Below the pieces are notes generated by a model. That model saw only the letters and a list, made by a program, of their open reading frames with translations, ran no database searches and was not told the DNA's origin. 64,000 nucleotides of DNA from Pecten maximus. Lineage: Eukaryota. The position numbers were made by a program, and so were the translations under genes. Every line of letters starts with the position of its first letter. Within the stretch, counting starts at the first letter, position 1. The stretch is taken from the NCBI RefSeq assembly GCF_902652985.1, contig NC_047025.1, positions 36,890,001 through 36,954,000 of the forward strand, given 5' to 3'. Below are positions 571 through 22,419 of the stretch, in pieces.

Positions 571-920
571 AGACAATAGCATAACCCTATAAGCCCCTGA
601 TGATGTTAGTAATTTTGACAGTCCCGGGGGTGACAGCACATCTGTCATTGTCTGACAGAACCTTTGAATTTTATGTATTTTATCATACCAATGTTACCAG
701 GTGTGACAAAATTGTACACACACTATTTATTTATTTAAAAAATAACTGCAAAACAGAATAAGTAAGTTTTTAAGTGTAATATCAACAGCAGAGATTTTAT
801 AGATTTGTTTTGAACTACTTTGATGAGGATATAGATGTTAAATTGTCTGAGCCTTATAAAAGTAAATATTTACACAGTAATAAATAACCATATTTTACTG
901 TGACACACTACAATGCCTAC

Positions 921-1203
921 CTGTGCCATTCTTGGGTATAGAGTTGTAGGTACATGCGTTCCTTTCTGACAAAGGTTTCTTGTCCTTTTTAATTGATTTT
1001 GGGAGAAATGGGAGTTTATACTCCAGATCCTCATTTTTCTCAAACTTTATGGCTTTAAGCTTGTTTTCAGGTGAATGTCCATTGCGTGCGTGTTTGTTTT
1101 CGGGTGATAGTCCACCATGTCCGTGTTTGTGGCTCAGCGACTTGCCACCAGGGTGATGTGGCATCAGTGGCATTTTGCCCAACCTTTGATGTTTCAGTGG
1201 CAT
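921..1203 (-). CDS. Putative first coding exon of an unidentified gene (MPLKHQRLGKMPLMPHHPGG...PKNGT-G), phase-1 donor
   Basis: Non-repetitive 94-codon ORF from ATG 1203 in otherwise stop-rich DNA, ending at a good donor CAG|GTAGGC (920-915); possible acceptor ATTTATTCAG ending at 1307; no family recognised. Confidence 0.5.
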
Positions 1204-2829: not shown

Positions 2830-4584
2830 CACGAGGCTACTCCAACAATGTTAGAGGTTTTACACGAGGCTACTCGAACAATGTTAGAGATTTTACACGA
2901 GGCTACTCCAACAATGTTAGAGATTTTACACGAGGCTACTCCAACAATGTTAGAGATTTTACACGAGGCTACTCCAACAATGTTAGAGATTTTACACGAG
3001 GCTACTCCAACAATGTTAGAGGTTTTACACAAGGCTACTCCAACAATGTTAGAGATTTTACATGAGGCTACTCGAACAATGTTAGAGGTTTTACACGAGG
3101 CTACTCCAACAATGTTAGAGATTTTACACGAGGCTACTCCAACAATGTTAGAGATTTTACACGAGGCTACTCCAACAATGTTAGAGATTTTACACGAGGC
3201 TACTCCAACAATGTTAGAGATTTTACACGAGGCTACTCCAACAATGTTAGAGGTTTTACACGAGGCTACTCCAACAATGTTAGAGATTTTACACGAGGCT
3301 ACTCCAACAATGTTAGAGATTTTACACGAGGCTACTCGAACAATGTTAGAGATTTTACACGAGGCTACTCCAACAATGTTAGAGGTTTTACACGAGGCTA
3401 CTCCAACAATGTTAGAGATTTTACACGAGGCTACTCCAACAATGTTAGAGATTTTACACGAGGCTACTCCAACAATGTTAGAGATTTTACACGAGGCTAC
3501 TCGAACAATGTTAGAGGTTTTACACGAGGCTACTCCAACAATGTTAGAGATTTTACACGAGGCTACTCCAACAATGTTAGAGATTTTACACGAGGCTACT
3601 CCAACAATGTTAGAGGTTTTACACGAGGCTACTCCAACAATGTTAGAGGTTTTACACGAGGCTACTCCAACAATGTTAGAGGTTTTACACGAGGCTACTC
3701 CAACAATGTTAGAGATTTTACACGAGGCTACTCCAACAATGTTAGAGGTTTTACACGAGGCTACTCCAACAATGTTAGAGGTTTTACACGAGGCTACTCC
3801 AACAATGTTAGAGATTTTACACGAGGCTACTCCAACAATGTTAGAGATTTTACACGAGGCTACTCCAACAATGTTAGAGATTTTACACGAGGCTACTCCA
3901 ACAATGTTAGAGATTTTACACGAGGCTACTCCAACAATGTTAGAGATTTTACACGAGGCTACTCCAACAATGTTAGAGGTTTTACACGAGGCTACTCCAA
4001 CAATGTTAGAGGTTTTACACGAGGCTACTCCAACAATGTTAGAGGTTTTACACGAGGCTACTCCAACAATGTTAGAGGTTTTACACGAGGCTACTCCAAC
4101 AATGTTAGAGGTTTTACACGAGGCTACTCCAACAATGTTAGAGATTTTACACGAGGCTACTCCAACAATGTTAGAGATTTTACACGAGGCTACTCCAACA
4201 ATGTTAGAGGTTTTACACGAGGCTACTCGAACAATGTTAGAGATTTTACACGAGGCTACTCCAACAATGTTAGAGATTTTACACGAGGCTACTCCAACAA
4301 TGTTAGAGATTTTACACGAGGCTACTCCAACAATGTTAGAGATTTTACACGAGGCTACTCCAACAATGTTAGAGATTTTACACGAGGCTACTCCAACAAT
4401 GTTAGAGGTTTTACACGAGGCTACTCCAACAATGTTAGAGGTTTTACACGAGGCTACTCCAACAATGTTAGAGGTTTTACACGAGGCTACTCCAACAATG
4501 TTAGAGATTTTACACGAGGCTACTCCAACAATGTTAGAGGTTTTACACAAGGCTACTCCAACAATGTTAGAGATTTTACACGAC
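2830..4584. repeat. 33-bp minisatellite (CACGAGGCTACTCCAACAATGTTAGAG[A/G]TTTTA), ~53 near-identical copies
   Basis: Direct reading; the unit is a multiple of 3, which explains the ~600-aa ORFs on both strands. Confidence 0.98.
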
Positions 4585-5136
4585 GAGATACTTTGACAGG
4601 CACCATGTAACAGGTCTCTGATAGAAAAAGAGCCAACAAGCGGAGTAGTACGAGGCGAGAACGATCACTGACTAAGGTCCTATTGGGTATTGCAACTTAC
4701 AAATTGTGCTCAAAGAACTAGCTCACTTGGCAATTTTTACAAGTATATAACAAGTGGACAACATCCACAGATGTGTTAACAACACAGATCTACTTATGAT
4801 TGTATAAATTACACAATAACGTAGATCATGCTACACATCGGTGAAATGTCACCAGAGTATGAGAGTGGATCAGCAAACACCTCACACTTTGGAGTAGACG
4901 GTATTATATCCTCAATGGTAATGACAACAAAATCATCTAAATTTAAATTGACAATACAAATTATAATAAACCTTTAAAATACAAAAGAAATCCAAATATT
5001 TAGATAATCAAAGCTTTCATATAGCTGTGATATGAATAAATGTCTTAACCTGTCGTCACCTACAAATGTATCTATTCTGGTCAGGCTTGTAACAAGGTAG
5101 CTCTGCTGGGCCTACAAGTACATTGTGGCCAAGTGT

Positions 5137-5605
5137 GACTACATGGTGTCCGGGCCTGACTACATGGTGTCCGGGCCTGACTACATGGTGTCCGGGCCTG
5201 ACTACATGGTGTCCGGGCCTGAGTACATGGTGGCCATCAGGCCTGTACATGGATGCAAGTGTTAAGCCTAACTGACTATATGACGGGCAGGCCTTTAAAT
5301 GGTGGCCTGTGTGAGGCATCAGACTACATGGTGGCTGGGCCCTGTACATGACGGCCAGGCTTATGTCTGGTGGCCAAGTCTGACTACATGGTGGCCAGTG
5401 AGGCCTCACTACATGGTGGCTGGGCCCTGTACATGGCGGCCAGGCTTATGTCTGGTGGCCAAGTCTGACTACATGGTGGCCAGTGAGGCCTCACTACATG
5501 GTGGCTGGGCCCTGTACATGGCGGCCAGGCTTATGTCTGGTGGCCAAGTCTGACTACATGGTGGCCAGTGAGGCCTCACTACATGGTAGTCTGGCCTGTA
5601 CATGG
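5137..5605. repeat. GC-rich composite tandem repeat: four 21-bp units (GACTACATGGTGTCCGGGCCT), then three 85-bp units built from the same CTACATGGTGG motif
   Basis: 85-bp units start at 5324, 5409 and 5494, with a partial fourth at 5579. Confidence 0.9.
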
Positions 5606-7102
5606 TGGTGGTATATGGATCATGAGTACTATTTTGTAATTCTGGCCATTCACAAGGACACATGGGAATCATTCAGTCATTAACAGGCAGCTTTAAGAGT
5701 ACAGAGCTGGCTATACCCCCATGCCATTCTCTCAGCACTTCCATTTGGATTTTTTTTTTTTATTAAAGAAGTCTCCAAAGGACAATTTGTAGGGACATCA
5801 CAAAGTATACAAATGTAGCCTGTTTGCAGTATATGCATGATTTTTTTATGCCACTTCTTATAAAAAAAGATTGACATGATTTAGAGTGTGAAATGGCTAT
5901 CCTTTATATCAGGTACAGTCTCACAGGCCCCACAGGGGTCCAAGGTGAAAATTGTGCAACACACAGGGGTAGAGATTTCAATGGTGTAATGCTGAACAAG
6001 ACTTTACAAGGGATGGACATTTTATCAATCTGTAGGAGTGTGAATATCCCGTTACTTCAGAGAAGTGAAGCATTAAAAAGGGGTGAACTTATACCTGAAT
6101 GATTTAACCATTGTATTCACACATCAAAGTTACTGTGTTCCAAAATCACTTGTATTCAAGTACATAATTAAAAGGTCATGATCATACTCTTTCTATCAGA
6201 TCGAGGTAAGAATAATTAAACAGATCAAATAGTTTTATAATTAAGCCTATTCAAAGTTCAGTCAAGTAAATGTTCTGAAAATTCAAATTATTATCAAACC
6301 TGATGATTTGGGAACTTGTATTCTGGGTGTAACATTATAATCAATGAACACGCTAGTGTCTCGGTGACCTTGACCTCTAGTACTCACTATTGACCAACAT
6401 AGAACATTGTAACAAGGAGTGCCTGTCCAGATATTGACCCTGATATCTGATTGCTCTACAGCGATTTTCAGAGGACCCAAACATATATTTGTTTTCCATT
6501 AAAAGGAAAAAAAATCAAATGACAGTAATTAGTTGTATTATTCCATTGAGCTAGTGGTCTGTGTGATTGGCCCACAGCAGACACATTATTTACACTGTGT
6601 TAGGTAGAGTCGGTTCCTCCTAACGACAATTCATCTGACAACCAATTAACCTATGCTTAAATACATTAACAAGTTGTTATTATCTGAAAAGGGATGTTCT
6701 ATCTGGCCTGGGCCCAGGACTACAATCTTTAATTAATTACAGTTCTTTTAATATCATTTATATTTCAAAATTTAAATAGTTTTTATAATTTACTTCACCT
6801 GGATCAAAAGTAAGTATATATTGTTTTGAACTTTTGAATAATTATAATCACACTGTAGGGAAACATGAATCTGACAATAAATGTAAACTTTGACAGATGA
6901 CAACCAAATCTATAATCAGATGTACACTGTTGTTATAAATCTCTCCAAGGGTTCATCAAATATCTAGTATCAAACTATTTGCCTGCAAGCACAGATGTAA
7001 AATAAAATATGTATGTACAAACTCGTGCACAGACAGACATATGCCCCCTCACATATAGTACTGGTGTCTACATGTAATGCTACAATGTATTTCATGATAT
7101 AA

Positions 7103-7686
7103 TGTAGCGGGGTGTAATATGTCTTAAAATGATGACAATGCCGCTGGGTTCGTTTGATTTCAAAGGTTTTATTATTACTCAAAAACCCACGTTAACACGT
7201 ATAGTGCATCAACGTGAGGCTTAACACTGCTCACTTCCATGACCGTCATATACCGCACAACAGATGTAAACAATACAGGAATACGACTCTATATGGTGAC
7301 AGATGAATTCGAAGACCTACATTTTGTAGCTCCGGCTTCAATGACGTCGAAATTCAAATGTCCCGAAACACAAAGAAACAAAGACTAAAACCACAGATAA
7401 GAACTTTCAACCAATCAAACAACTTTGTTACAGTCACATGTCACGTTCGTCAGTGAAATATACTCACAGGTACAAAGACATACACATACCAATATACAAA
7501 CACGCGCACGGGATCGCCGGTAACGAATATATATATATGCACGGACGCAGGTAAAAGGTCGCGAGGGCCTTATACCTCAATAATAAATACCTTACATATT
7601 TATTATATTTTATTAATAATTATCACACATATACATGTATACATTTCACAAATATCAAACACTTTATTAAAAATAACCCTATTACA
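7103..7686 (-). repeat. 3' LTR of Gypsy element 1 (584 bp)
   Basis: Direct repeat of 14811-15394; TG..CA ends; adjacent PPT. Confidence 0.97.
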
Positions 7687-7698
7687 TACTCCCCCTGG
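7687..7698 (-). other. Polypurine tract of element 1 (CCAGGGGGAGTA)
   Basis: Purine run directly 5' of the 3' LTR on the minus strand. Confidence 0.85.
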
Positions 7699-7933
7699 TT
7701 CGAAAAAGACGTCCTCGTCTTAAAACAAGTTGGGAAATATCTTACTTATCATAAATACAAAATCTAGTCATGTACATTATGCATCAAATACATTACTAAA
7801 TATCACAATGTCACAAATCATACGTACATTCAAATAAAAATCAAAAGAAAAGAGCGCGAATATGAAAGTTTAAGAAAAACACATATCTATTTAAAACATG
7901 TAGAATAAAACAGTCCAGCTGGAAACAATATAT

Positions 7934-10900
7934 CTAACAAATCACATCTCCACATACGATTCTAACGAGAGCATCTGATACTCGATCAGGAGCAAGTACT
8001 CCACGCTCACCCAGACGTTGTAAATACTCTGCTCTCGTGAACCAATCCGATGAAATCCCTTGACATAATTGGTTCATCACGAACTCTCCTGACTGCTGCC
8101 ACAAAGGAGGCTGCCTAGCTCTAGTAGATCTTCTAGGAGCTGGCGTTGGTACCCGTGGTGCAATTGGTGCTACCACATCTTGATCATCCTGGACTGAAAC
8201 ACCCCCAGTCTCATCATTCCCCGAGACTTGGTCGTCACCAGGCGGAGCTTCGTCCACTACCACAGTCGGATGACAGTCGTCACCATCAACAGACTGGGCA
8301 GACTCTTGTCTATCAGACGCCGGAGTATCCTCCTTGGGATGTGAAGGTATCCCATTCTCCAATTCTGATAGCGGGCCCTCTACAGGATCATCAATGACGA
8401 CTGATGAGTCGACATCTTCATCGGAGTCGCTGTCTGCGGTCTCCAAAGTAACAATATCCTCCTCCTCTGGCTTGGTCAATGTCCTCTTTCTTGTTGTTGA
8501 CTCCGGTTTCTCATCAAAACTCACTTCATCTGTGTCATGCAGGAAATCGATGGGCAAGAGCAAATTGCGGTGCAATGTCTTTTCTTTTCCTTCGCCATTA
8601 CACTTGCGGACGACATAGACAGGCACATCTGGATTAGGCTGACGAATCACGACGTATTCATCATCTTCCCATTTGTCGGAGATTTTGTGTTTTCCTTCAA
8701 ATGCCATAATCCGAACTAGAACTCTGTCTCCATCCTGTAAAGCAACTGCTCTAGCCTTCCTGTCGTAATTCCTCTTCTGGTGTTCTGCAGCTGTAGACAT
8801 AAACCGTCTTGCAGAGTCATAGGCATTCTTCAGGTTCTCGCGAAGAGACGATACAAACTTGGACAATGGTTGATGCTTCCCTCCAATGTCTATTCCGAAT
8901 GCCAAGTCGATGGGTAACCTAGGTTGTCTACCAAACATCAGAAAGAATGGAGAATAGCCTGTGCTATCGTGCCGTATGCTGTTGTATGCATGAACAAGAG
9001 GACCGACATGCCTTTTCCAGTCTCCTTTATCCTTCGGGTCCAAAGTACCCAACATCCCTAGCAACGTCCGGTTAAACCTCTCACAGCTTCCATTACCCAT
9101 TGGGTGGTACGGCGTAGTCCTACTCTTCTTGATGTTGGCTATAGCGCATAACTGGTGAATTAAGTTTCCAACAAAATTGGCACCTTGATCAGAGTGTATA
9201 CGTCTAGGCATTCCGTAATGTACAACAAAGTTGTAGAAAAATGCCTCAGCTGTAGTTTTAGCGGTTTGATTTTTCGTAGGAATGGCTTGTGCGTACTTGG
9301 TGAAGTGATCCGTCACAACCAGTATATGCTGAAATCCTCCTTTAGATGACTCCAAGGTAAGGAAATCCATACACACTAGCTCCAGTGGCTGGGTTGTCTG
9401 GATATTCACTAATGGCGCTTTCTGAGTAACTGCCTTCCTAAATATACAGCGTCGACACCTTTTCACCCATCTCTCCACGTCCTGAGTCATTCCTGGCCAA
9501 TAAAAACGTTCCTGAATAAGTGACAATGTCCTATCACGTCCGGGGTGTCCGACAGAATTGTGAAGTCCATATAAGGCTTGTTTCCGAAAAGCAGGAGGTA
9601 ATATCAGCTGTTTTCTGGATGTACCATCTTCTATGACTTCTCGATAAATCACCCCCTTATCGATTTTTAATCTGTCAAAGGAACGTAACAAAGTTTGCTG
9701 ATCAGGATCTAACTGTCTTCTATCTGGCCTCTGGTTATTCCGAACATAAAATAACATCTGCCGGAGTACTGGATCTCTGTCCTGAGCTCGTCTCCAATCT
9801 CTAGAAGTCATCTCCTGAATATCCTGACCAGAGTCCATGAATTGCTCATCAATGACTGAAGTAGACATGGAAACGGTCTCAATCCAGGCTACTGGCTGTT
9901 GTACTGCACCGCAAATAGCCTTGACAGAATCCAAAGGGATATCCTTAACAGATGTAGACTCCTCAATGTGGGATGGCAGTCTAGACATAATGTCAGCATC
10001 TGTATTGTTCTTTCCTGGCTTGTAGATGATGTTGAAGTCAAACGCGGATAATGCAGCCAACCATCTATGTCCCGTCGCATCCAACTTGGCAGACGTTAAA
10101 ACATATGTCAGTGGATTGTTGTCGGTGGTAACTGTAAACTTCCTTCCGTACAGGTAATCCGTAAATTTGTCAGTCACTGCCCACTTTAAAGCTAAAAATT
10201 CCAATTTATGGGCAGGATAATTCCGCTCAGATTTCGTCAATCCTCTGCTTGCATAAGCAATGACCCGCGGTTTTCCATCCTGCTGCTGGTAAAGGATCGC
10301 CCCAAGACCATGTCCACTTGCGTCTGTATGTACTTCAAATGGGATGTCATATAATGGATATCCAAGAACAGGCGGTGAGGATAAAACACTCTTCATGGTC
10401 TGGAACGCTGTTTCCTGCTCTTTCTCCCATTTCCATACAGTTGACGCAGTCTTGCTCCTAGTAGAATGGCCTTTCTTCCTTGTAGGTGGTAATAGCTCGT
10501 TCAGTGGCTTCACGATGGCAGAAAAACCTTCCACAAACTTACGATAGTAGCCACAGAATCCCAAGAAACGTCTCAAATCATCCGGACCAGAGGGCTTAGG
10601 CCAGTCAACTATCTTCTGTACCTTATCAGGATCTGCTTCTATACCATCCTTAGAAACAACGAAACCAAGAAACTTCACTTTCTTCTTGAAATAAGAGCAT
10701 TTCTGTGGAGCTAGCTTTAATCCATGGTGCCTTATCTTCTCAAATACTAACTCTAACCTCTCTATATGCTCACCGAATGTCTTGGAAAACACTATGACGT
10801 CGTCTATATAGACAAAGCAAATGGTGGTATGGAGCTCTCCAAGGCACTCTTCCATCAATCTTTGGTAAGTCGCTGGTGCATTCACTAACCCGAATGGCAT

Positions 10901-12340
10901 CCTATTGAATTCATAGAATCCTAACGGTCCGATGGTGAAAGCAGTCCTTGACTTATGTTCCTCGTGAAGTTCGACCTGATGGTAACCACTCTTCATATCC
11001 AGTGTAGAAAAATAATCACATCCTGATAAAGAATCTAAAATCTCCTCCACCCTAGGAAGAGCATAAGAATCCTTTACAGTCCTAAGATTCAACTGACGGT
11101 AGTCGATGCACATCCGCAGTCGTCCGTCCTTCTTCCGTACCAATACAACTGCAGAGGCCCAAGGTGAATGAGAGCGACGAATAACTCCTATGTCCAAAAG
11201 TTGATGTAGGTGATCACGCACTTCACTGAGCATAGCAGGAGGAATACGACGATGGCGTTGTTTAAATGGCACTTCATCTGTGAGCTCAATACGGTGATGA
11301 ACAGCATTAGAGTGTCCAAGATCCATATCCCCTTTAGAAAATATATCGGGGAAACTGGAAATCATCTGTTTACTAATTGTAAACTCCTCTTCAGACAATC
11401 TATCATCAAACTTCATCTGTCGCATCAAGGCTTCCATATCCGTGCCTACAGAATCATCAGTATCATCAGATGTGTCCACATCTTGCAAACATCCTTCGAC
11501 CTTCACTGGCTGAATCTCACAAAGCACCGCACGAGGCTGTATGGTAACATTCCTGGCAGTGATGTTAGATATGGTCACAGGAACAACGCCATTTCCTCTA
11601 TAATGGTACTGAATAAGACTGGGCGATATATCCAAATCATCGACTAATGTCGACTCATTCGATGTTGTAAGGTAAGCACTGGTGGGTGTATGCTCGACTT
11701 GATGATCAACGTAGCCATTAATAGTAACTTGACTATTGGGCTTAACTTGAATTGCAGTACCTTCAGCACTCTTTACTACACCAAGACAGAATTTTTTCCG
11801 AATCAAATTCTGTTGACGCAATGCAATACATCGGAATGTAATATACCAAGGCGTCGAGAGTGAGGATCCTTTCATCAACTTATCACCACAAACTTGCTTA
11901 CAGGAGTCCATGATATCCATCAATATGTTGGTCCCCACTAGAATTGGTACCTTAGAATTATATCTGGTGTCTGGTACAACCAATAGAAGTCCTGGTAAAG
12001 GTGTATTGTGGCCCTCAATTGTAGTCTCTATCTCGGCCTGTATAAAACCATCATATGGCAATGCCTCTCCCCCAGCACACTCAATATCTAAAACATCGTT
12101 TAAAGAATGAAGTGGTAAATGGCTCAAATGACTGTCGTAGAAGTTACGACTAACAGTGCTGACCGCTGAACCAGTATCCAACAATGCGGTAGTATTCACC
12201 CCAGAAATCTTTAACTGTTCCTCACTGCAATCTCCAACCAGTGCTGTACCGGTATCATCATGATCATCTTGCATGATAGGGCTCTGTTGTCCAATCCTGC
12301 CTACTGGTGCCCCAGGCCTGTAGGCGTCCGAGCGTTTAAA
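7934..12340 (-). CDS. pol: Pol polyprotein (protease, RT, RNase H, integrase, acidic tail), translated via -1 frameshift from gag
   Basis: LLDTGS protease; LRMCIDYRQLN and YIDD RT motifs; TDASGHG/LEFLALKWA RNase H; HNSVGH...CRRC zinc finger; IHSDQG/ERFNRTL integrase core. Confidence 0.96.
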   Translation of the reverse strand, partial: FKRSDAYRPGAPVGRIGQQSPIMQDDHDDTGTALVGDCSEEQLKISGVNTTALLDTGSAVSTVSRNFYDSHLSHLPLHSLNDVLDIECAGGEALPYDGFIQAEIETTIEGHNTPLPGLLLVVPDTRYNSKVPILVGTNILMDIMDSCKQVCGDKLMKGSSLSTPWYITFRCIALRQQNLIRKKFCLGVVKSAEGTAIQVKPNSQVTINGYVDHQVEHTPTSAYLTTSNESTLVDDLDISPSLIQYHYRGNGVVPVTISNITARNVTIQPRAVLCEIQPVKVEGCLQDVDTSDDTDDSVGTDMEALMRQMKFDDRLSEEEFTISKQMISSFPDIFSKGDMDLGHSNAVHHRIELTDEVPFKQRHRRIPPAMLSEVRDHLHQLLDIGVIRRSHSPWASAVVLVRKKDGRLRMCIDYRQLNLRTVKDSYALPRVEEILDSLSGCDYFSTLDMKSGYHQVELHEEHKSRTAFTIGPLGFYEFNRMPFGLVNAPATYQRLMEECLGELHTTICFVYIDDVIVFSKTFGEHIERLELVFEKIRHHGLKLAPQKCSYFKKKVKFLGFVVSKDGIEADPDKVQKIVDWPKPSGPDDLRRFLGFCGYYRKFVEGFSAIVKPLNELLPPTRKKGHSTRSKTASTVWKWEKEQETAFQTMKSVLSSPPVLGYPLYDIPFEVHTDASGHGLGAILYQQQDGKPRVIAYASRGLTKSERNYPAHKLEFLALKWAVTDKFTDYLYGRKFTVTTDNNPLTYVLTSAKLDATGHRWLAALSAFDFNIIYKPGKNNTDADIMSRLPSHIEESTSVKDIPLDSVKAICGAVQQPVAWIETVSMSTSVIDEQFMDSGQDIQEMTSRDWRRAQDRDPVLRQMLFYVRNNQRPDRRQLDPDQQTLLRSFDRLKIDKGVIYREVIEDGTSRKQLILPPAFRKQALYGLHNSVGHPGRDRTLSLIQERFYWPGMTQDVERWVKRCRRCIFRKAVTQKAPLVNIQTTQPLELVCMDFLTLESSKGGFQHILVVTDHFTKYAQAIPTKNQTAKTTAEAFFYNFVVHYGMPRRIHSDQGANFVGNLIHQLCAIANIKKSRTTPYHPMGNGSCERFNRTLLGMLGTLDPKDKGDWKRHVGPLVHAYNSIRHDSTGYSPFFLMFGRQPRLPIDLAFGIDIGGKHQPLSKFVSSLRENLKNAYDSARRFMSTAAEHQKRNYDRKARAVALQDGDRVLVRIMAFEGKHKISDKWEDDEYVVIRQPNPDVPVYVVRKCNGEGKEKTLHRNLLLPIDFLHDTDEVSFDEKPESTTRKRTLTKPEEEDIVTLETADSDSDEDVDSSVVIDDPVEGPLSELENGIPSHPKEDTPASDRQESAQSVDGDDCHPTVVVDEAPPGDDQVSGNDETGGVSVQDDQDVVAPIAPRVPTPAPRRSTRARQPPLWQQSGEFVMNQLCQGISSDWFTRAEYLQRLGERGVLAPDRVSDALVRIVCGDVIC
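12277..12340 (-). promoter_or_regulatory. -1 ribosomal frameshift signal: U UUA AAC slippery site plus predicted H-type pseudoknot
   Basis: Gag frame TCT TTA AAC; the -1 frame continues FKRSDAY into pol; stem1 GCCUAC(A)GG/CC(A)GUAGGC, stem2 UGGGGC/GCCCUA. Confidence 0.85.
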
Positions 12341-13395
12341 GACTTTCTGCTGTGATCTAAATTCACTCGACAATCTCGTTTGATGTGTCCTGGCTGTCCA
12401 CATCTCCAGCATACTGGTCTATCACTATCTCCTCTATAAGGTTTGTCCTGCCTCCTATAGTCCTGAGGTACCTTATAAGATCCACGTGCAGGTGGACAAC
12501 CATGGCCTGACTCCCTATTCTTCTGTAAGGATACTAAATCCTGTTTCAGCTTAGACATCTCAGTCGTAAGGTCCTTTACCAAAGCCTTCATTTCTTTAAT
12601 GTCCTCGTTGTGTGGTATGGCAACCTTAACAGGTTTAGGCTTCTCTGGTGAGGCGTCGGCCTGCTCTATCTGCCTAACAGCAATGCGAAGTTTGTCATAG
12701 TCCTGAATAGTATCAAACTTGTGACCAGTAACATCACGTAGCGACTTCTTAAGTCCACGCCAAAACTTAGTCCGTAACATCTCTGTGACCTGAGATTGGG
12801 TAAGCTCACATCGGGTTTTAGCTCTATCCAAAATATCTTCAAGTCTACTGGCCCAAGATGTCACACTCTCTGAATCTTCTTGTTTAGCAGAATAAAATTT
12901 GGCAAGCAAATCCTCTGCAGCAGCAATGTTTCCATAGTTTCCAGTCATCTTATCCAACACCTGTTGTAATGCAACTGAAGATCCCATTCTTCTAGCTGTA
13001 TTTGCTGCTTCACCTCTTAAAGATCTTCTCACGGCTTGGAAAATAGCCTGATCCTTGTAAATTCCATCTCGTTGTAACATCTCAACCTCATAGATCCATT
13101 GCTCAAACGGTACCTCTCCATGAGGGACTTGTGGAGATCCTGAAAATATGGAAATCTTCGGCACATAATATGAAGTATTATGTGTGCTGGATGGTACTGT
13201 ATCATCTCGATGATCTTGTAACACCTGGGAAAGATCGAGGATCGGTTCACGCTTCACAACCTTGGCTTTAGCTCCTCCCGCTAAAAGATCAGTTAACCAC
13301 TGAGCTGCAGTATCCTTAGATTCTAGATCTGGTTTAAGGTTCATAGCTGCTAAAGCCTCCATCAAATGTTCAGCTTGCTTCCCAGCATCCGCCAT
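12301..13395 (-). CDS. gag: Gag (PNMA-like capsid plus CCHC zinc knuckle); probable start MADAGK
   Basis: KISIFSG...EVPFEQWIYEVE capsid-like motif; CWRCGQPGHIKRDC knuckle; strong context ACTATGG at 13395. Confidence 0.93.
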   Translation of the reverse strand: MADAGKQAEHLMEALAAMNLKPDLESKDTAAQWLTDLLAGGAKAKVVKREPILDLSQVLQDHRDDTVPSSTHNTSYYVPKISIFSGSPQVPHGEVPFEQWIYEVEMLQRDGIYKDQAIFQAVRRSLRGEAANTARRMGSSVALQQVLDKMTGNYGNIAAAEDLLAKFYSAKQEDSESVTSWASRLEDILDRAKTRCELTQSQVTEMLRTKFWRGLKKSLRDVTGHKFDTIQDYDKLRIAVRQIEQADASPEKPKPVKVAIPHNEDIKEMKALVKDLTTEMSKLKQDLVSLQKNRESGHGCPPARGSYKVPQDYRRQDKPYRGDSDRPVCWRCGQPGHIKRDCRVNLDHSRKSLNARTPTGLGHQ

Positions 13396-14790
13396 AGTTG
13401 AAGTATTACACAGAGTACACAAGCACAATAATACAAGTAATATAATCATGAAGTCCAATGTGAAAAATGAGAGCCAATACTGCAAAAAAAACCTAACAAA
13501 GTCCAAATATGCCGATAACTGGAAATAAATTCAAGAAAATTTTAAAGTCCAAATAAGCTGAAAATCAAAAATAAATACAGAAAATTCATCAAAGTCCAAA
13601 CACAGGTAATAATACACAAGAAAATATTATATAAATGTGTATAGGAAAATAAACACTAGCAATAAATCAAAGTCCAAATTTATCTGAAAATCAAAGCTGA
13701 AATTGAAAAAGAAATGAAAACGCAAACACGGTTCAAATTAATAGAGCTAGTCTAAAGCCTACAAGGTGTCTGAAATTCACAAAAATAAACAACCACAAAA
13801 TATCTGAAATGCAAAAAGATACAAACAATGTCAAAGCGACAAATATTTCTAAGTATAAACACCTAAAGCAATAAATTCTAACACCGAATAAATCAATTAA
13901 ATGAAAGAAAATCCACAAAATCTGAAAGAAAAACTCATAGATTCAAAGATATACAAAATAAAGTACTATGTAAAGGGAAATAATCATTAGCTAATCTATC
14001 AAGGGCAAATAACTCACCAATGTCAAGACAATAATCAACAAGATAATCTAATTACATATATAAGCAAGCATGTGTCTAGATGGCATTGATAAAAAAACAA
14101 ATTGACATAACACACAAACTAAAGTAATCTAGATTACAGGGTATTACGCGAAAACCGAAAACTCCGAACAGAAAAGAAAAGCGTGTCGCAAGCGCAGCAG
14201 TTCAACATATATAACACACAAACACAGATTGAACAACAAATAATAATCACATGGAAGTCACGACAGTGTAATGTCAGTTAATGTGTCTTGGTCAGTGCAA
14301 AATATCAACTACCCAACTAAGAATAGATAAACCGACAAATAAAGAACCAATGCAGCAAAAGATTTACTAAGTATACAAAGATACTAACCTTTCTACAGCG
14401 GGTAAGCAGGGCAGGTACAGGTAGAAGTTTCCATGCTCACATTCAGATTCACGATTCAGATCCACACATTTTACGAATAATACAGGAATAAACACATGAC
14501 AACACTAAATTCCAAATAGAATACACGAATAAACACATAAATAATCCATGCTATAATGAATGAGTCACTGAATAATATCCTTTCCCGTCATAAAGTTCAA
14601 TTTAGTTCAAAATGAAAACGTAAGTCCATTCACATGTGTGCCACCATCAACATCCGGTTTCACATATCGGTGTCACCTTCCCATAGTGCCATACTGAAAA
14701 GTTCCGGGTGCAAAAGTTCCGGACCAAACTGGAATTCGACGATCACGTCAGGCAAGTGCAAACCCTCCGGTCCCTCAGTCTAACGGAGTA

Positions 14791-14808
14791 GTCCCTACAT
14801 GGGCGCCA
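14791..14808 (-). other. Primer-binding site of element 1, tRNA-Lys-like (TGGCGCCCATGTAGGGAC)
   Basis: 2 nt after the 5' LTR; 14/18 match to the tRNA-Lys3-type PBS TGGCGCCCGAACAGGGAC. Confidence 0.8.
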
Positions 14809-14810
14809 TT

Positions 14811-15394
14811 TGTAGCGGGGTGTAATATGTCTTAAAATGATGACAATGCCGCTGGGTTCGTTTGATTTCAAAGGTTTTATTATTACTCAAAAACCCACGT
14901 TAACACGTATAGTGCATCAACGTGAGGCTTAACACTGCTCACTTCCATGACCGTCATATACCGCACAACAGATGTAAACAATACAGGAATACGACTCTAT
15001 ATGGTGACAGATGAATTCGAAGACCTACATTTTGTAGCTCCGGCTTCAATGACGTCGAAATTCAAATGTCCCGAAACACAAAGAAACAAAGACTAAAACC
15101 ACAGATAAGAACTTTCAACCAATCAAACAACTTTGTTACAGTCACATGTCACGTTCGTCAGTGAAATATACTCACAGGTACAAAGACATACACATACCAA
15201 TATACAAACACGCGCACGGGATCGCCGGTAACGAATATATATATATGCACGGACGCAGGTAAAAGGTCGCGAGGGCCTTATACCTCAATAATAAATACCT
15301 TACATATTTATTATATTTTATTAATAATTATCACACATATACATGTATACATTTCACAAATATCAAACACTTTATTAAAAATAACCCTATTACA
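14811..15394 (-). repeat. 5' LTR of Gypsy element 1 (584 bp)
   Basis: Direct repeat of 7103-7686. Confidence 0.97.
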
Positions 15395-19116: not shown

Positions 19117-19596
19117 TGTACATGTATATTGATATAGATAAAGAGGCTTTATAAGCCTGCATCCATAATGCACCATCCTAATTCCTGATATCTTGCTAGG
19201 TTGAACATAGAATGTAGAATATAGCAAGCCTGAAGACCTAGTCTGATCCCTAGGTGAGGCACTGAAATATTTTTTTAGCTTACCATGCACTGATCTGTAA
19301 CATTGACACCCATGTAGGGACTCAGGAATCATTGGATATTTAACGTTACTTTCACAACCATCTACATTGTAACCCCTAATGAAGACTTAATGAGGCTAAG
19401 TGAGTTTTTCCCTAGAGGAGCCGAGGAGTTGTAAACTTGTATACAATATACCACTTATAGCTGGAGAGAACTTCTCATTAGCTTGAATCGGTTGATCATA
19501 GGACTAGTAAAAATTAAGCCACAGGTCCTGGCTTTCGATCCCTATCAGAGGCACCGAAATACATTTTCTCTCTCATTAATCCTGCATTCTGTTACA
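19117..19596 (+). mobile_element. Degenerate TRIM with tRNA-like LTRs (Helenus-like): 5' LTR ~19117-19302, PBS 19304-19321, PPT 19414-19428, 3' LTR 19430-19596
   Basis: Both LTRs end CTGT(A/T)ACA and share GATCCCT...GAGGCAC(C/T)GAAATA; PBS TGACACCCATGTAGGGAC; PPT AGAGGAGCCGAGGAG before TGTAAAC; A/B-box-like motifs in the 3' LTR; 5' boundary uncertain. Confidence 0.65.
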
Positions 19597-19664
19597 TATC
19601 TGATATTGTAATAAAGTTTGGTTTGTAATAGTAATAGTGTAACGTACACAGGGAGTACAACGGA

Positions 19665-19714
19665 GCGGTCACCCATCCAAGAGCTGACCATGCTCGACAT
19701 TGCTTAACTTCGGT
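19665..19714 (-). ncRNA. 5S rRNA-derived internal control region (box A, IE, box C) inside the TRIM 3' LTR; not a complete 5S gene
   Basis: ACCGAAGTTAAGCAATGTCGAGCATGGTCAGCTCTTGGATGGGTGACCGC closely matches the central part of invertebrate 5S rRNA as I recall it. Confidence 0.85.
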
Positions 19715-20003
19715 ACAAAAGCCACAAAAGTTAGCTCTGAAATGCCCATATCCATGAACCATCACAGTACCCCCTTCACCGATAAGCTTCATCCCGAAGC
19801 TTCCATGGGTTCAACCTGGCATCCTCAGCAAACACAACTGTCCCTGTTATTGTTATAGTGGTGCCGCCTCATGACCAGACCCCCTGGTCACCAACAAGTC
19901 TCCAGGAACATTGTGCTTCCCATGCTGTCTAAGGGCACCCTACAGGATACCTGAGGCCCCTTTCGCTGCCACCAAATGTAACGTGCACAAGGGGAACAAC
20001 GGA

Positions 20004-20046
20004 GCAGTCAACCATCCAAGAGCTGACCACGCTCGACGTTGCTTAA
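20004..20046 (-). ncRNA. Second 5S-derived segment in the TRIM 5' LTR, cut at TTAA inside box A (continues at 21953)
   Basis: TTAAGCAACGTCGAGCGTGGTCAGCTCTTGGATGGTTGACTGC. Confidence 0.8.
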
Positions 20047-21948
20047 AGCCACATACTCCCAAAGAAACATATATCAATGGTTACATTTTGAACTTTTTAT
20101 AGTTTTCAGACTTGATACATACCTAACAGATCATCATTAATCAGAAACTGAAAGAAGATGTGTATTTATGAAAGTATACTGGGTATTCACAAAAATAATT
20201 ACTGTGGCTGCCGGACCAAGTTTCTCTGAAAATTAGTCCCACAATGCAACGGCGGGTTTTACAGTCCATACAAAATGGTAGAATGCCGAAAGCGTGGACC
20301 TGCAAAAACGCAGACATATTCTGCAAAAAAAAAACGTAAAAGGGAGTGGAATAGCATACATGTCAACCTCTGAAACCTCCAATGAGGGAGATCTCCCTCA
20401 TTCCACATCTAAAATCAGGGAGAAAGTGCGTGAAAAAAATCGCGACATTTTTTTAGGTGATGTTCCTCATGGGCTTGTGCAGGTGTAAATTACCTCGGGC
20501 TACAGTTTGATATTTAAATTTGACAACAATGGTTAATTTTAAAGAATAATGATAATAAAAAAAAAATAGAAGAAAAAAATTAATTTAAAAAAAAATGTTT
20601 TCAGAAATTTCATAGAAAGGAACTGTATTTAGTGTATTATATTATTAATGATGTAGTCACTTGAAATTTGCAACCAGTATACAAAGCAACTACTTATCTC
20701 CTGATTTTTTTTTTTTTCATTATTTTGTTCTGAAATATTTCTAAATGTATCAAATTATCTCCCTTCCTTTCTCAAATAATAATTACACGGTAATTTATTT
20801 CTTTTTGTTTTACTAGTAGTTCTATTATGACATAAAACAAACTTCTTAAAAAGTCTTTTTATTTTCTTTCTGACCCAAATTGAAATCCGGATTTTTGTGG
20901 CAGTTTACGATTTATATTAGTATTGACCAATTAAAGATGGCGGCAGTACAAACGCTGGTACTGACAGCTACGATTAAGAAAGGCATTATTGGCTTTCATG
21001 TGAGTAAATCTTGTTGGCAGATATTATCAGTGTTTGTTCTTGAAGTGATGTATCCTAGTTGTAATCACAAAATTAACTGACCATGTCAAATGAAGCCAAA
21101 TACAGTTGTAATGTATACACCGGTCGGCAGGCTTGCACGATGAGTGGTGACCGACCCTCTCTCACCAAGCCCCAGGCCAGGGCAGCTACACAGGTGGTGG
21201 GGTTGTTTTGATTACATAATCAGATTAGGGTCGAAGTGTCTGAGATTTCCGGGGTTTTATGAGGGAAGACTGCTCAAATCCGGGAGAAATTTAACCCCGA
21301 TTCGGGAAATGTAACAAATCGGGATTTAGGGGAAATTTAATTGATTTTCCGGGCACTTCCCGCGTAATCCGGGAAGGTTGACACCTATGGAATAGGCAAA
21401 ACCCGAGTATTTCCTTAGGAAAGGAAATGATGTGTTGGAACTAAGTGAGAAAAGATAATGGAATAGACTCTTGCAAATTTCGATTTTGCCGGACGTCTAT
21501 TGGATTGCTGGTTAGCTTTTGAACATTGTCAACTTCACCAATTAAAAATTTTATTGATGTTTTAATTGTATGCATATTGCTACATTTTAAAATTAAGTAT
21601 TAAAATGTAAACTGTGTTTGTTTATTTTTTTTCAGTTATTACACGAATATTCTGTTAATATATTTAAATGAAAGCATTATTAGACAAAGTTCACATATGC
21701 TCAATATGTAAACAACAGCCATGTGTGTAGTTTATGTGCAGCACACGTTGTTATAGCCTTGTTCTCGGCTCATTGACAAATCTTGCGATAAATATAAATG
21801 CAGCGAGTTATTTTTATACACTGATGTCTCAAGGACTCCCCTGGTCAAGCGTCCTGGCCAGTGGTCATTTTAATGTTAGGAGAGCGTGAATGAGCATCTT
21901 GGATTGCCATCAATACATGTGTACAACTAGAATAAGAGTATAGTGGCT
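20047..21948. mobile_element. Non-autonomous TTAA-specific DNA transposon (Kolobok-like termini AG...CT) inserted in the TRIM 5' LTR
   Basis: TTAA TSD at 20043-20046 and 21949-21952; TIR AGCCAC-ATACTC / GAGTATAGTGGCT. Confidence 0.8.
20355..21389. mobile_element. Non-autonomous DNA transposon (1035 bp) with a 6-bp TSD, nested in the TTAA element
   Basis: TSD GAATAG (20349-20354, 21390-21395); 15-bp TIR CATA(CA/GG)TGTCAACCT; subterminal CGGG repeats; 22-bp perfect palindrome at 20381-20402. Confidence 0.82.
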
Positions 21949-22419
21949 TTAACTTCTGTACACAGACAATATACTCATCTGAACAGCCACAAAAGCTAGC
22001 TATTGGATTATGCAGCTGAAATGCCCATATCCATGAACCGCCACATTAGTTCCCGAAACAATCCCATTCCTTCCCAGTACTCAGTCTACTGTTTTGTATT
22101 TTATATTCAAACTCATGTTAAAACACTTAAAACAACTACTTTCAGTAAATGTTGGTCCAACCCTAAACAACTATGTACATACATGAAGTTCCGACAAGCT
22201 TAAGAAAACATTCGGCAAACTGTCATGTTATTCTAGACACGGTTGAGTACCCTACAGTGGAACATAACGTTAGTTATCGTACAAAATGTACAGTGTACAG
22301 CTGACTTGATTACATTAGAATATGTAAACACAACTATATTTCCACGCAATCTCACACCAGCAATTTAAATATCGACCTTCTGATGAGGTTAAGATTAGTT
22401 TTATTTGTGATATACGTAC

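What the first reader, a model, noticed from the sequence alone, without database searches (positions are those of the whole stretch)
19638..22045. Miniature LTR retroelement carrying a 5S rRNA Pol III promoter in both LTRs (Cassandra/Ajax-like TRIM) in a probable mollusc
Seen: removing the TTAA insert (20047-21952) leaves a ~500-bp non-coding element on the minus strand. It reads 5' LTR (163 bp, TG..CA), TT, PBS TGGTGGCAGCG, the rest of a 210-bp internal region, PPT GGTGAAGGGGGTAC, 3' LTR (129 bp, two small deletions), with flanks ATAG/TTAG. Each LTR holds the box A/IE/box C region of 5S rRNA in the same orientation as the PBS and PPT. Known: 5S-bearing TRIMs are the plant Cassandra family; from memory, an animal counterpart (Ajax) was reported only from nemerteans and with 5-bp TSDs. 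Inference: this may be an undescribed bivalve family, transcribed by Pol III (TFIIIA/C) and mobilised in trans by a tRNA-Leu-primed Gypsy. By 5S spacing the start site would be near 22003.
Basis: partly seen in the sequence, partly recalled or inferred. Interest (0 to 1): 0.88.

Follow-up and report, generated by a model that had tools for sequence, protein, structure and literature searches.

The report
Scallop mini-retrotransposon with 5S promoter LTRs
This is an old, broken copy of a small non-coding LTR retrotransposon family of the king scallop whose terminal repeats carry the internal promoter of the 5S rRNA gene, a design so far reported only from plants (Cassandra) and two ribbon worms (Ajax).

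Summary
The genome is Pecten maximus xPecMax1.1. On the minus strand lies a TRIM:
- 163-bp 5' LTR, split at a TTAA by a 1.9-kb nested insertion
- TT spacer, then an 11-nt PBS complementary to the host tRNA-Leu 3' end
- 210-bp internal region ending in a PPT
- 129-bp 3' LTR, shortened by deletions

The family is real. About 210 LTRs and about 50 internal regions were counted. Intact copies measure 163-207-163 bp. Perfect 4-bp TSDs flank 11 of 20 copies. LTR-pair identity runs from 100% to 83%, and one tandem LTR-I-LTR-I-LTR array exists.

LTR 87-136 matches host 5S rRNA positions 45-94 at 46/50, covering box A, IE and box C. Rfam's 5S model finds nothing, so only the promoter part is kept, as in Ajax.

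New here: LTR 7-89 forms a 37-bp hairpin in the sense RNA only (z -5.8 to -7.9; antisense z about 0). The predicted Pol III start and the LTR's only T4 run sit at its apex.

Pol III transcription and the Gypsy helper remain inferences; no RNA data could be obtained. No mollusc 5S-TRIM was found in the searchable literature, and Repbase and Dfam could not be checked. Verdict: new member of a known kind, moderate interest.

The parts
22046..22049 (-). 5' flanking target site (CTAA on the minus strand)
   Evidence: Matches the 3' flank CTAT at 3 of 4 positions. The family makes 4-bp TSDs.
21953..22045 (-). 5' LTR, first part (LTR positions 1-93), starting TGTG
   Evidence: 82/93 identical to the intact copy L002. 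Holds the degraded hairpin region, LTR 7-89 = 22039-21957.
21991..21994 (-). T4 run of the 5' LTR (LTR 52-55), the only T4 in an intact LTR. The start predicted from 5S spacing is LTR 43 = 22003.
   Evidence: T4 at LTR 52-55 is kept in 89-96% of 47 aligned LTR copies.
20047..21948 (-). Nested insertion (1902 bp) into the TTAA of box A of the 5' LTR, flanked by duplicated TTAA (21952-21949 and 20046-20043). Not part of the TRIM.
   Evidence: Intact copies have one TTAA here. The outer part is a repeat with about 1089 first-look candidates. The inner part, 20355-21389, is another repeat with about 1816 candidates.
19977..20046 (-). 5' LTR, second part (LTR 94-163), ending GTTACA. Holds the rest of box A (20046-20034), IE (20031-20026) and box C (20018-20001).
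   Evidence: 67/70 identical to L002. Local match to host 5S positions 52-94.
19964..19974 (-). Primer binding site TGGTGGCAGCG, preceded by the TT spacer at 19976-19975
   Evidence: 11-nt complement of the 3' end (...CGCTGCCA plus CCA) of host tRNA-Leu(AAG) and tRNA-Leu(TAG) genes. Present in most of the 30 internal regions shown.
19767..19976 (-). Internal region (210 bp), non-coding, no T4 run
   Evidence: 196 matches, 11 mismatches and 3 gap columns against L002's internal region. 28 of 30 copies have no TTTT. Longest ATG ORF in an intact copy is 47 aa.
19784..19803 (-). 8-bp hairpin (GAAGCTTCG-GGA-(C/T)GAAGCTT) just upstream of the PPT
   Evidence: Present in nearly all copies and part of the MFE fold. 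Similar hairpin-plus-PPT ends are seen by eye in Ajax and in P. maximus Helenus sequences.
19767..19780 (-). Polypurine tract GGTGAAGGGGGTAC abutting the 3' LTR
   Evidence: The commonest form among the other copies is GGCGAAGGGGGTAA followed by TGTGATGG.
19638..19766 (-). 3' LTR (129 bp; two deletions remove much of the hairpin arms). 5S-like segment at 19714-19665: box A 19709-19695, IE 19692-19687, box C 19679-19662.
   Evidence: 122 matches, 7 mismatches and 34 gap columns against the L002 LTR. 45/50 to host 5S positions 45-94. The last 70 nt are 62/70 identical to the 5' LTR.
19634..19637 (-). 3' flanking target site (CTAT on the minus strand)

Best explanation
The feature is a dead copy of a roughly 533-bp non-autonomous LTR retrotransposon (TRIM) family of Pecten maximus.

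Shown:
- Two 163-bp LTRs (TG..CA), a tRNA-Leu primer binding site, a polypurine tract, no ORF and 4-bp target-site duplications.
- About 210 LTRs and about 50 internal regions in the genome.
- In every LTR, in element orientation, a 50-nt segment nearly identical to the host 5S rRNA gene's internal control region (box A, IE, box C).
- No other recognisable part of 5S.

Inferred mechanism:
- TFIIIA/TFIIIC/TFIIIB assemble on the 5' LTR.
- RNA polymerase III starts about 50 bp upstream of box A (about LTR 43).
- It reads through the T4-free internal region and stops at the T4 run (LTR 52-55) of the 3' LTR, giving an RNA of about 380 nt.
- That RNA would have U3 = LTR 1-42, a short R = 43-55 and U5 = 56-163.
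- LTR 7-46 and LTR 51-89 are complementary in the sense RNA only. The two RNA ends could therefore pair as a panhandle and hold donor and acceptor together for the first strand transfer.
- Reverse transcription is primed by tRNA-Leu.
- Integration is by the integrase of an autonomous tRNA-Leu-primed Ty3/Gypsy element that makes 4-bp duplications.

The window copy itself is inactive. Its LTRs differ by about 11%, box A of the 5' LTR is split by a TTAA insertion, and the 3' LTR has lost 34 bp.
For: Family and architecture:
- 70 matches and 312 first-look candidates in the genome.
- 30 loci show LTR(163)-internal(207)-LTR(163).
- Perfect 4-bp TSDs in 11 of 20 copies, with the fifth base not shared.
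- PBS and PPT are present in nearly all copies shown.
- LTR-pair identity ranges from 100% to 83%.
- 215 and 211 genome hits for two LTR 28-mers against 52 for an internal 28-mer, with controls at 0.

5S module:
- LTR 87-136 matches host 5S positions 45-94 at 46/50 without indels.
- Box A is 15/15, IE 5/6 and box C 15/18.
- The rest of 5S is unrecognisable and Rfam RF00001 is silent. This is the same pattern that defines Ajax.

PBS: host tRNA-Leu(AAG/TAG) genes end ...CACCGCTGCCA.

Transcript geometry:
- The only T4 of the LTR is at 52-55, and there is none in the internal region of 28 of 30 copies.
- Sense-strand hairpin LTR 7-89: -42.9 kcal/mol, z -5.8 to -7.9, against -11.8 kcal/mol and z +0.4 for the antisense.
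- In a model RNA from LTR 43 to LTR 55, 43 pairs join the first 50 and last 55 nt. The end duplex is -57.7 kcal/mol against -21.9 +/- 4.0 for shuffles.

Helper plausibility:
- 76 genomic sites read CA-NN-TGGTGGCAGCGGTG.
- One is a full 8.9-kb element with RT-RNaseH-integrase order, near-identical LTRs, and the same GTTACA-TT-PBS junction as the TRIM.
Against:
- If Pol III starts at about LTR 43, it meets the T4 run only about 10 nt downstream in the 5' LTR. It would have to read through there yet stop at the same run in the 3' LTR. If it starts after the run, there is no R.
- The absence of T4 over about 366 nt is only weakly informative. My rough estimate, not run with a tool, is about 1.7 expected by chance.
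- Conservation among genomic copies is flat across the LTR (0.92 in the 5S part, 0.91-0.92 upstream). This is expected for neutrally decaying copies and gives no evidence of selection on the promoter.
- No autonomous element sharing more than the LTR end and PBS was found.
Confidence: 0.65

Rival explanations
1. It is an ordinary TRIM transcribed by Pol II or by read-through from neighbouring genes. The 5S fragment is a passenger relic, for example from an old 5S-SINE insertion or template switch into an ancestral LTR, with no promoter role today.
For: - No expression data.
- The T4 run lies about 10 nt after the predicted Pol III start.
- Flat conservation among copies.
- Modest copy number, about 50 internal regions.
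Against: - A neutral relic should have decayed evenly. Yet 5S positions 45-94 are 92% identical to the host gene with no indels, while the other 69 nt of 5S are unrecognisable.
- Nemertean Ajax retains the same selective part.
- The sense-only hairpin covers LTR 7-89. If the whole hairpin lay inside the transcript, at most 6 nt of the LTR would be left upstream for a Pol II promoter.
Confidence: 0.25
2. On origin: the 5S piece was captured freshly from the scallop's own 5S gene, making this an independent bivalve invention that only converges on Ajax and Cassandra.
For: - 46/50 identity to the host 5S gene.
- Box A is identical to the host's.
- 4-bp rather than 5-bp TSD.
- The internal region shows no obvious similarity to the Ajax internal sequences read.
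Against: All points below are by eye, from the sequences printed:
- The scallop LTR and both Ajax LTRs share the two 5S differences GAGCG and GGTCA, where the host has GAGCC and GGTTA.
- They share the same spacings, TGGC-5 nt-GGTTG-19 nt-GAAGTTAAGC, where the 5S gene has 7 and 26.
- They share a YTTT(T/A) run just before TGGC.
- They share a hairpin centred a few nt downstream of the predicted start.
- They share an ATATGG(G)CA motif about 15 nt from the LTR start.
- 5S is so conserved that 92% identity to the host does not discriminate.
Confidence: 0.3
3. It is not an LTR element at all but a 5S-derived SINE (SINE3), a 5S pseudogene cluster or a tandem repeat.
For: - A tandem LTR-I-LTR-I-LTR array exists.
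- One solo LTR is amplified inside a satellite.
Against: - Paired identical LTRs with TG..CA ends, a PBS, a PPT and 4-bp TSDs at dispersed sites on many chromosomes.
- The 5S-variant string occurs about as often (211) as the string spanning the 5S/non-5S junction of the LTR (215). No separate SINE family therefore carries it.
- No poly(A) or LINE-like tail.
Confidence: 0.02

Closest known systems
Ajax (Ajax-1_NGe, Ajax-1_LiLo), 5S-promoter TRIMs of the nemerteans Notospermus geniculatus and Lineus longissimus (Kojima 2024, PMC10886601)
   Same: - TRIM with LTRs of about 150-165 bp.
- Only the box A/IE/box C part of 5S is kept, near the 3' end of the LTR.
- tRNA-Leu PBS.
- More LTRs than internal parts (Ajax-1_LiLo 1114 vs 151; here about 210 vs about 50).
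- By eye: the same spacing from the T-run/TGGC motif to box A, a hairpin at the predicted start, and a hairpin plus CGAAGGGGG-type PPT at the end of the internal region.
   Different: - 4-bp rather than 5-bp TSD.
- 533 bp rather than 421-434 bp.
- An 11-nt PBS including the CCA complement, against the 6-nt TGGCAG match reported for Ajax.
- The internal region is about twice as long, with no evident similarity.
- A much longer hairpin (37 bp against about 11 bp).
- Host phylum Mollusca.
Cassandra, plant 5S-TRIM (Kalendar et al. 2008; PMC7215508, PMC10853983)
   Same: - Non-autonomous TRIM with the 5S Pol III promoter in both LTRs.
- Forms tandem LTR-internal arrays.
- The promoter closely mirrors the host 5S gene.
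   Different: - Per those papers, Cassandra LTRs carry 5S sequences that adopt 5S-like secondary structures after transcription, with Pol III promoters and terminators.
- The scallop LTR keeps 50 nt only, is not recognised by Rfam's 5S model, and has its only T4 upstream of box A.
- Different kingdom.
Helenus, tRNA-promoter TRIMs, five families in Pecten maximus (Kojima 2024)
   Same: - Same genome.
- Same size class.
- 4-bp TSDs.
- Same TRIMp3 idea: a small-RNA-gene Pol III promoter in the LTR.
- Similar hairpin-plus-PPT end of the internal region, by eye.
   Different: - Helenus LTRs carry a tRNA-like module, not 5S.
- The four P. maximus Helenus internal regions read start with TGGCGCC- or TGGTGCC-type PBSs, not the Leu PBS.
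- None has the 163/207-bp dimensions.
- The 5S string is absent from the paper's sequence file.
SINE3 (5S rRNA-derived SINEs)
   Same: A 5S internal promoter drives a non-autonomous retroelement. Kojima proposes that SINE3 heads are the source of the Ajax and Cassandra modules.
   Different: SINE3 elements have no LTRs, PBS or PPT and are mobilised by LINEs. In this genome the 5S-variant string was counted only about as often as the LTR junction string, 211 vs 215.

Membership tests
TRIM (terminal-repeat retrotransposon in miniature) | Two short direct terminal repeats (about 100-250 bp) with TG..CA ends; whole element under 1 kb | tested here: met
   163-bp LTRs running TGTG...TACA. Elements are about 533 bp in 20 or more copies.
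TRIM (terminal-repeat retrotransposon in miniature) | PBS complementary to a tRNA 3' end next to the 5' LTR, and a PPT next to the 3' LTR | tested here: met
   TT + TGGTGGCAGCG is the complement of host tRNA-Leu(AAG/TAG) plus CCA. The PPT GGCGAAGGGGGTAA abuts the 3' LTR.
TRIM (terminal-repeat retrotransposon in miniature) | No coding capacity | tested here: met
   The longest ATG ORF in an intact copy is 47 aa.
TRIM (terminal-repeat retrotransposon in miniature) | Target-site duplications at dispersed insertions | tested here: met
   Perfect 4-bp TSDs in 11 of 20 copies on different chromosomes.
Ajax (Kojima 2024) | [quoted passage not shown] | tested here: met
   LTR 87-136 equals host 5S positions 45-94 at 46/50. 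There is no RF00001 hit at E<=10 on the window or on an intact copy.
Ajax (Kojima 2024) | 5-bp target-site duplication | tested here: not met
   TSDs are 4 bp; the fifth base does not match in the perfect cases.
Ajax (Kojima 2024) | PBS complementary to tRNA-Leu | tested here: met
   11-nt complement. The paper reports TGGCAG for Ajax.
Ajax (Kojima 2024) | Sequence homology to Ajax-1_NGe / Ajax-1_LiLo beyond the 5S control region | tested here: inconclusive
   Comparison was by eye only, using the sequences printed. Shared spacings, two shared 5S variants, hairpin position and an ATATGG(G)CA motif were seen. The internal regions look unrelated.
Cassandra | LTR carries a 5S domain that adopts a 5S-like secondary structure | tested here: not met
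   Only 50 nt are 5S-like, and Rfam's 5S model gives no hit.
Cassandra | Pol III terminator in the LTR associated with the 5S domain | tested here: not met
   There is no T4 after box C. The only T4 is at LTR 52-55, upstream of box A.
Cassandra | Demonstrated Pol III transcripts | not testable with these tools
SINE3 | 5S head at the element's 5' end, LINE-type tail, no LTR/PBS/PPT | tested here: not met
   The 5S segment lies inside both LTRs of an LTR-PBS-PPT element. The 5S-variant and LTR-junction strings have equal counts.
Type 1 (5S) Pol III promoter | Box A, intermediate element and box C in gene-like order and spacing (Xenopus numbering 50-64, 67-72, 80-97; established knowledge) | tested here: met
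   15/15, 5/6 and 15/18 identical to the host gene, with no indel between them.
Type 1 (5S) Pol III promoter | Binding of TFIIIA/TFIIIC and transcription by Pol III | not testable with these tools
   Needs RNA or ChIP data.

The most novel reading that the evidence does not exclude
The family, and by eye Ajax too, uses a so far undescribed layout for a Pol III-driven LTR element. The RNA's start and stop both lie at the apex of an LTR-encoded hairpin, so R is only about 10-13 nt. The two hairpin arms become U3 at the RNA 3' end and U5 at the RNA 5' end. These arms pair through 37 bp, 11 of them G-U and hence sense-strand specific, into a panhandle. The panhandle would replace a long R in minus-strand transfer, comparable to the 5'-3' cyclisation sequences I recall for yeast Ty1. 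The T4 run about 10 nt from the start would be ignored in the 5' LTR but used in the 3' LTR. That would be a Pol III counterpart of retroviral promoter-proximal poly(A)-site occlusion. The shared module would also imply that Ajax-type elements predate the mollusc-nemertean split or moved between the two phyla.
Probability: 0.2. Interest if true: 0.7.

Novelty: new member of a known kind. Interest (0 to 1): 0.5.

Why it matters
LTR retrotransposons that swapped their Pol II promoter for the 5S gene's internal Pol III promoter were known from plants (Cassandra) and, since 2024, from two ribbon worms (Ajax).

A well-defined family in a scallop would put the design in a third lineage and a second lophotrochozoan phylum. 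Its 4-bp duplications point to a different helper integrase. It sits in the very assembly already mined for the tRNA-type relatives (Helenus).

Practical consequences:
- Such LTRs can be mistaken for 5S pseudogenes or extra 5S loci in annotation and FISH.
- They add Pol III promoter-like sites across the genome.

The sense-only hairpin centred on the predicted start and stop gives a concrete, testable idea of how a Pol III transcript with almost no R region could still complete LTR-type reverse transcription.

Tried and rejected
- **Rfam.** The gathering and E<=10 scans of the window, and of an intact copy, gave no 5S hit. The few weak hits to bacterial or trypanosome sRNA families are chance.
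- **Selection test.** Per-position identity among 47 LTR copies is flat: 0.92 in the 5S part, 0.91-0.92 upstream, 0.86 at the 3' end. Dispersed copies decay neutrally, so this neither supports nor refutes promoter function.
- **Neighbouring Gypsy as helper.** The young Gypsy at about 7.1-15.1 kb of the window has the PBS TGGCGCCCATGTAGGGA, not the Leu PBS. Rejected as helper.
- **Other helper candidates.** Leu-primed LTR elements are common, and one full Ty3/Gypsy (L064) shares GTTACA-TT-PBS. Beyond that 20-nt junction, BLAST finds nothing convincing in common with the TRIM. The helper is not identified.
- **L051.** Three LTRs at odd spacing suggested a longer relative. They turned out to be one solo LTR amplified with a 34-bp satellite.
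- **Homology of LTR 52-86 to 5S positions 1-44.** Two incompatible weak alignments exist. I treat this stretch as unassigned.
- **Published biv-TRIM (PMC6934838).** It lacks a canonical PBS, no 5S link appears in the passages searched, and no scallop is among its host species. It is not this family.
- **Computed alignment with Ajax.** The comparison was made by eye only.
- **Rules kept.** Natural copies (L002, L004) served as references.
Full report
**1. What is in the window**

- An LTR starts with TGTG at 22045 and runs to 21953.
- It is interrupted at a TTAA and resumes at 20046, ending ...GTTACA at 19977. The two parts total 163 bp.
- Then come TT, the primer binding site TGGTGGCAGCG (19974-19964) and a 210-bp internal region.
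- The internal region ends in the purine tract GGTGAAGGGGGTAC (19780-19767).
- A 129-bp second LTR follows (19766-19638).
- The flanks are CTAA and CTAT.

Piecewise alignment to an intact genomic copy gave these values:

| Part | Result |
|---|---|
| 5' LTR, first part | 82/93 |
| 5' LTR, second part | 67/70 |
| 3' LTR | 122 matches, 7 mismatches, 34 gap columns |
| Internal region | 196 matches, 11 mismatches, 3 gap columns |

The last 70 nt of the two LTRs are 62/70 identical. This copy is therefore old.

**2. The host**

The window's assembly has 918,306,378 bp in 3,983 contigs, and its longest contig is 60,076,705 bp. These are exactly the figures published for Pecten maximus xPecMax1.1 (PMC7191990).

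**3. It is a family, and it is an LTR element**
- A search of the genome with the uninterrupted 409 bp gave 70 matches from 312 first-look candidates.
- In the 30 loci fetched, the pieces are arranged LTR(163)-internal(207)-LTR(163). One place carries LTR-I-LTR-I-LTR in tandem.
- Eleven of twenty two-LTR copies have perfect 4-bp target-site duplications on different chromosomes. Several more match at 3 of 4 positions. The fifth base is not shared.
- The junctions ...GTTACA TT TGGTGGCAGCGAAC and GGCGAAGGGGGTAA TGTGATGG... are kept in nearly all copies.
- LTR-pair identity ranges from 100% (two copies) down to 83%. Insertions therefore accumulated over a long time.
- Whole-genome pattern counts give 215 and 211 LTRs for two different 28-mers at up to 3 mismatches. 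An internal 28-mer gives 52. Reversed-pattern controls give 0.
- That is roughly 50 elements with internal parts and about 100 solo LTRs.
- The longest ATG ORF of an intact copy is 47 aa.

These results refute the SINE, pseudogene and satellite readings.

**4. The 5S piece**

The genome's own 5S genes were located with RF00001.
- Against one of them, LTR positions 87-136 match 5S positions 45-94 at 46/50 without gaps.
- In the standard Xenopus numbering (established knowledge: box A 50-64, IE 67-72, box C 80-97), box A is 15/15, IE 5/6 and box C 15/18 identical to the host gene.
- The remaining 69 nt of 5S are not recognisable.
- Infernal with Rfam's 5S model finds nothing at E<=10, either in the window or in an intact copy.

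The LTR thus holds the internal control region but cannot encode a 5S-like RNA. In the window, the TTAA insertion splits box A of the 5' LTR. The 3' LTR keeps the segment at 45/50.

**5. The primer**

Twenty-six genomic sites match the 3' end GTTCGAATCCCA(C/A)CGCTGCCA. ARAGORN calls those examined tRNA-Leu(TAG) and tRNA-Leu(AAG). With CCA added, the last 11 nt are the exact complement of the PBS.

**6.

Folding the LTR as RNA gives a long hairpin. LTR 7-46 pairs with 51-89 through 37 pairs, of which 26 are Watson-Crick and 11 are G-U. The apex is at 47-50.

| Sequence folded | Energy (kcal/mol) | z-score |
|---|---|---|
| Typical copies, first 93 nt, sense | -42.9 to -44.4 | -5.8 to -7.9 |
| Same stretch, reverse complement | -11.8 to -14.4 | about 0 |
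| Window copy's 5' LTR | -23.9 | -0.4 |

The structure exists only in the sense strand, which points to the RNA or to single-stranded sense DNA. In the window copy's 5' LTR the hairpin is degraded.

Two other landmarks sit at the apex.
- The only T4 run of the LTR is at 52-55, present in about 90% of copies.
- The internal region has no T4 in 28 of 30 copies.

**7. Most likely mechanism (inferred)**
- The type 1 promoter in the 5' LTR recruits Pol III, which starts near LTR 43.
- The polymerase crosses the T4-free body and stops at the T4 of the 3' LTR, giving an RNA of about 380 nt.
- In that RNA, U3 is LTR 1-42, R is about 43-55 and U5 is 56-163.
- In such a model RNA, the minimum-energy fold joins the first 50 and last 55 nt through 43 pairs. 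The end-to-end duplex is -57.7 kcal/mol against -21.9 +/- 4.0 for shuffled ends.
- The result is a panhandle that could bring the strand-transfer donor and acceptor together despite the tiny R. From memory, yeast Ty1 uses 5'-3' cyclisation sequences in a comparable way.
- An internal promoter also explains why so little of the LTR is left for U3.
- tRNA-Leu primes reverse transcription.
- A helper's integrase makes the 4-bp duplication.

Weak points:
- The T4 lies only about 10 nt after the predicted start and would have to be ignored in the 5' LTR.
- No transcript data could be obtained.
- Copy-to-copy conservation is flat, as expected for neutral decay, so it says nothing about selection.

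**8. The helper**
- The young Gypsy 4-12 kb away in the window uses TGGCGCCCATGTAGGGA, not the Leu PBS, so it is not the helper.
- Elsewhere the genome has 76 sites reading CA-NN-TGGTGGCAGCGGTG, belonging to several LTR families.
- One (L064) is a full 8.9-kb element. It has 933-bp LTRs 99.8% identical, gag with a zinc knuckle, and pol in RT-RNaseH-integrase order, which is the Ty3/Gypsy order.
- Its junction, GTTACA-TT-PBS, is the same as the TRIM's.
- Nothing else is shared with the TRIM.

A Leu-primed Gypsy helper is therefore plausible but not identified.

**9. Comparison with what is known**

Kojima 2024 (PMC10886601) defined Ajax as TRIMs whose LTRs hold only the promoter part of 5S.
- Ajax was found in two nemerteans, with 5-bp TSDs and a tRNA-Leu PBS. 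The elements are 421-434 bp long.
- The screen for 5S-type TRIMs covered only those two genomes.
- The same paper mined xPecMax1.1 for tRNA-type TRIMs (Helenus) and lists five families. None has 163/207-bp dimensions.
- The scallop 5S string is absent from the paper's sequence file.
- A 2024 review of rDNA-derived sequences in TEs lists only Cassandra and Ajax as 5S-promoter TRIMs (PMC10946416).
- The earlier bivalve TRIM, biv-TRIM (PMC6934838), has no canonical PBS, and no 5S link appears in the passages searched.

I compared the Ajax LTRs printed with the scallop LTR by eye. They share the following:
- The variants GAGCG and GGTCA, where the host 5S has GAGCC and GGTTA.
- Identical spacings, TGGC-5 nt-GGTTG-19 nt-GAAGTTAAGC, where the 5S gene has 7 and 26.
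- A T-run just before TGGC.
- An 11-bp hairpin (GGCCATGAGGG/CCTTTATGGCC in Ajax-1_LiLo, with a covarying pair in Ajax-1_NGe) centred a few nt after the predicted start.
- An ATATGG(G)CA motif near the LTR start.
- A small hairpin just before a CGAAGGGGG-type PPT.

This suggests that the 5S module, and perhaps the LTR, is related to Ajax rather than freshly captured.

The family meets the Ajax definition except for TSD length. It does not meet Cassandra's features: there is no 5S-like fold and no terminator after the 5S domain.

**10. Verdict**
- The structural interpretation is supported.
- The Pol III mechanism and the helper remain inferences.
- Within the searchable literature this is the first 5S-promoter TRIM in a mollusc. 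Repbase and Dfam were not checked.
- I class it as a new member of a known kind, of moderate interest. The apex-centred, sense-only hairpin is the most novel lead.

Noticed in passing
window 20047-21948 (inner part 20355-21389): The insertion that splits the 5' LTR is itself nested. An outer repeat (about 1089 first-look candidates) carries an inner repeat of about 1035 bp (about 1816 candidates; some copies 97-98% identical). It is flanked by a duplicated TTAA, with apparent terminal inverted repeats AGCCAC(T)ATACTC. However, all 39 other genomic matches of the outer part begin at insert position 16 or later, so the true end of that family is unclear.
   Followed up: partly
L051 (G000:C8:41550300-41554300), LTRs at 1046-1208, 1981-2143, 2724-2860: A solo LTR of the family sits inside a satellite of about 34 bp (GTGGGAGTGTGGCGGAAGTGTATCGTAGAGTA-like). 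It has been amplified three times together with the satellite as a higher-order repeat.
   Followed up: partly
L003/L005 (G000:C8:10757809-10758711): A tandem LTR-internal-LTR-internal-LTR array of the family, with a 370-bp period. Its flanks do not match as a TSD. This resembles the tandem arrays described for Cassandra.
   Followed up: partly
window about 7100-15110, minus strand: A young Ty3/Gypsy-sized element: direct repeats of at least 300 bp at 7103-7402 and 14811-15110 are 100% identical, with ORFs of 1492 and 401 aa between them. Its PBS TGGCGCCCATGTAGGGA is the same string as the PBS of Helenus-1_PeMa in Kojima's supplement. This is relevant to the neighbouring finding s1-793976, not to this one.
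   Followed up: partly
L064 (G000:C1:10672000-10681999), element 594-9516: A full-length tRNA-Leu-primed Ty3/Gypsy element of 8.9 kb. It has a third ORF of 322 aa after pol with a weak C2H2 zinc-finger hit, below the Pfam cutoff. BLAST-defined LTR starts show no purine tract upstream, so the LTR boundary may be a few bases off.
   Followed up: partly
Kojima 2024 supplement sequences compared with window 19784-19803: A short hairpin with a ...TCG-(R)GG(R)-CGA... top lies about 5-20 nt before the PPT. By eye it recurs in this family, in both Ajax families and in several P. maximus Helenus families. It may be a cis signal shared with their helpers.
   Followed up: no
window 19117-19596: Directly next to the 3' end of this element lies another small element with a tRNA-like segment (GGGATCGAAAGCC). 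Together with the nested insertion, this stretch is a small nest of transposable elements.
   Followed up: no
G000 contigs C515, C513, C6:24.48-24.50 Mb: The host 5S rRNA genes (119 bp, 119.5 bits) lie mostly in tandem arrays with a period of about 463 bp. Each is followed by T5 and then T4 runs.
   Followed up: no
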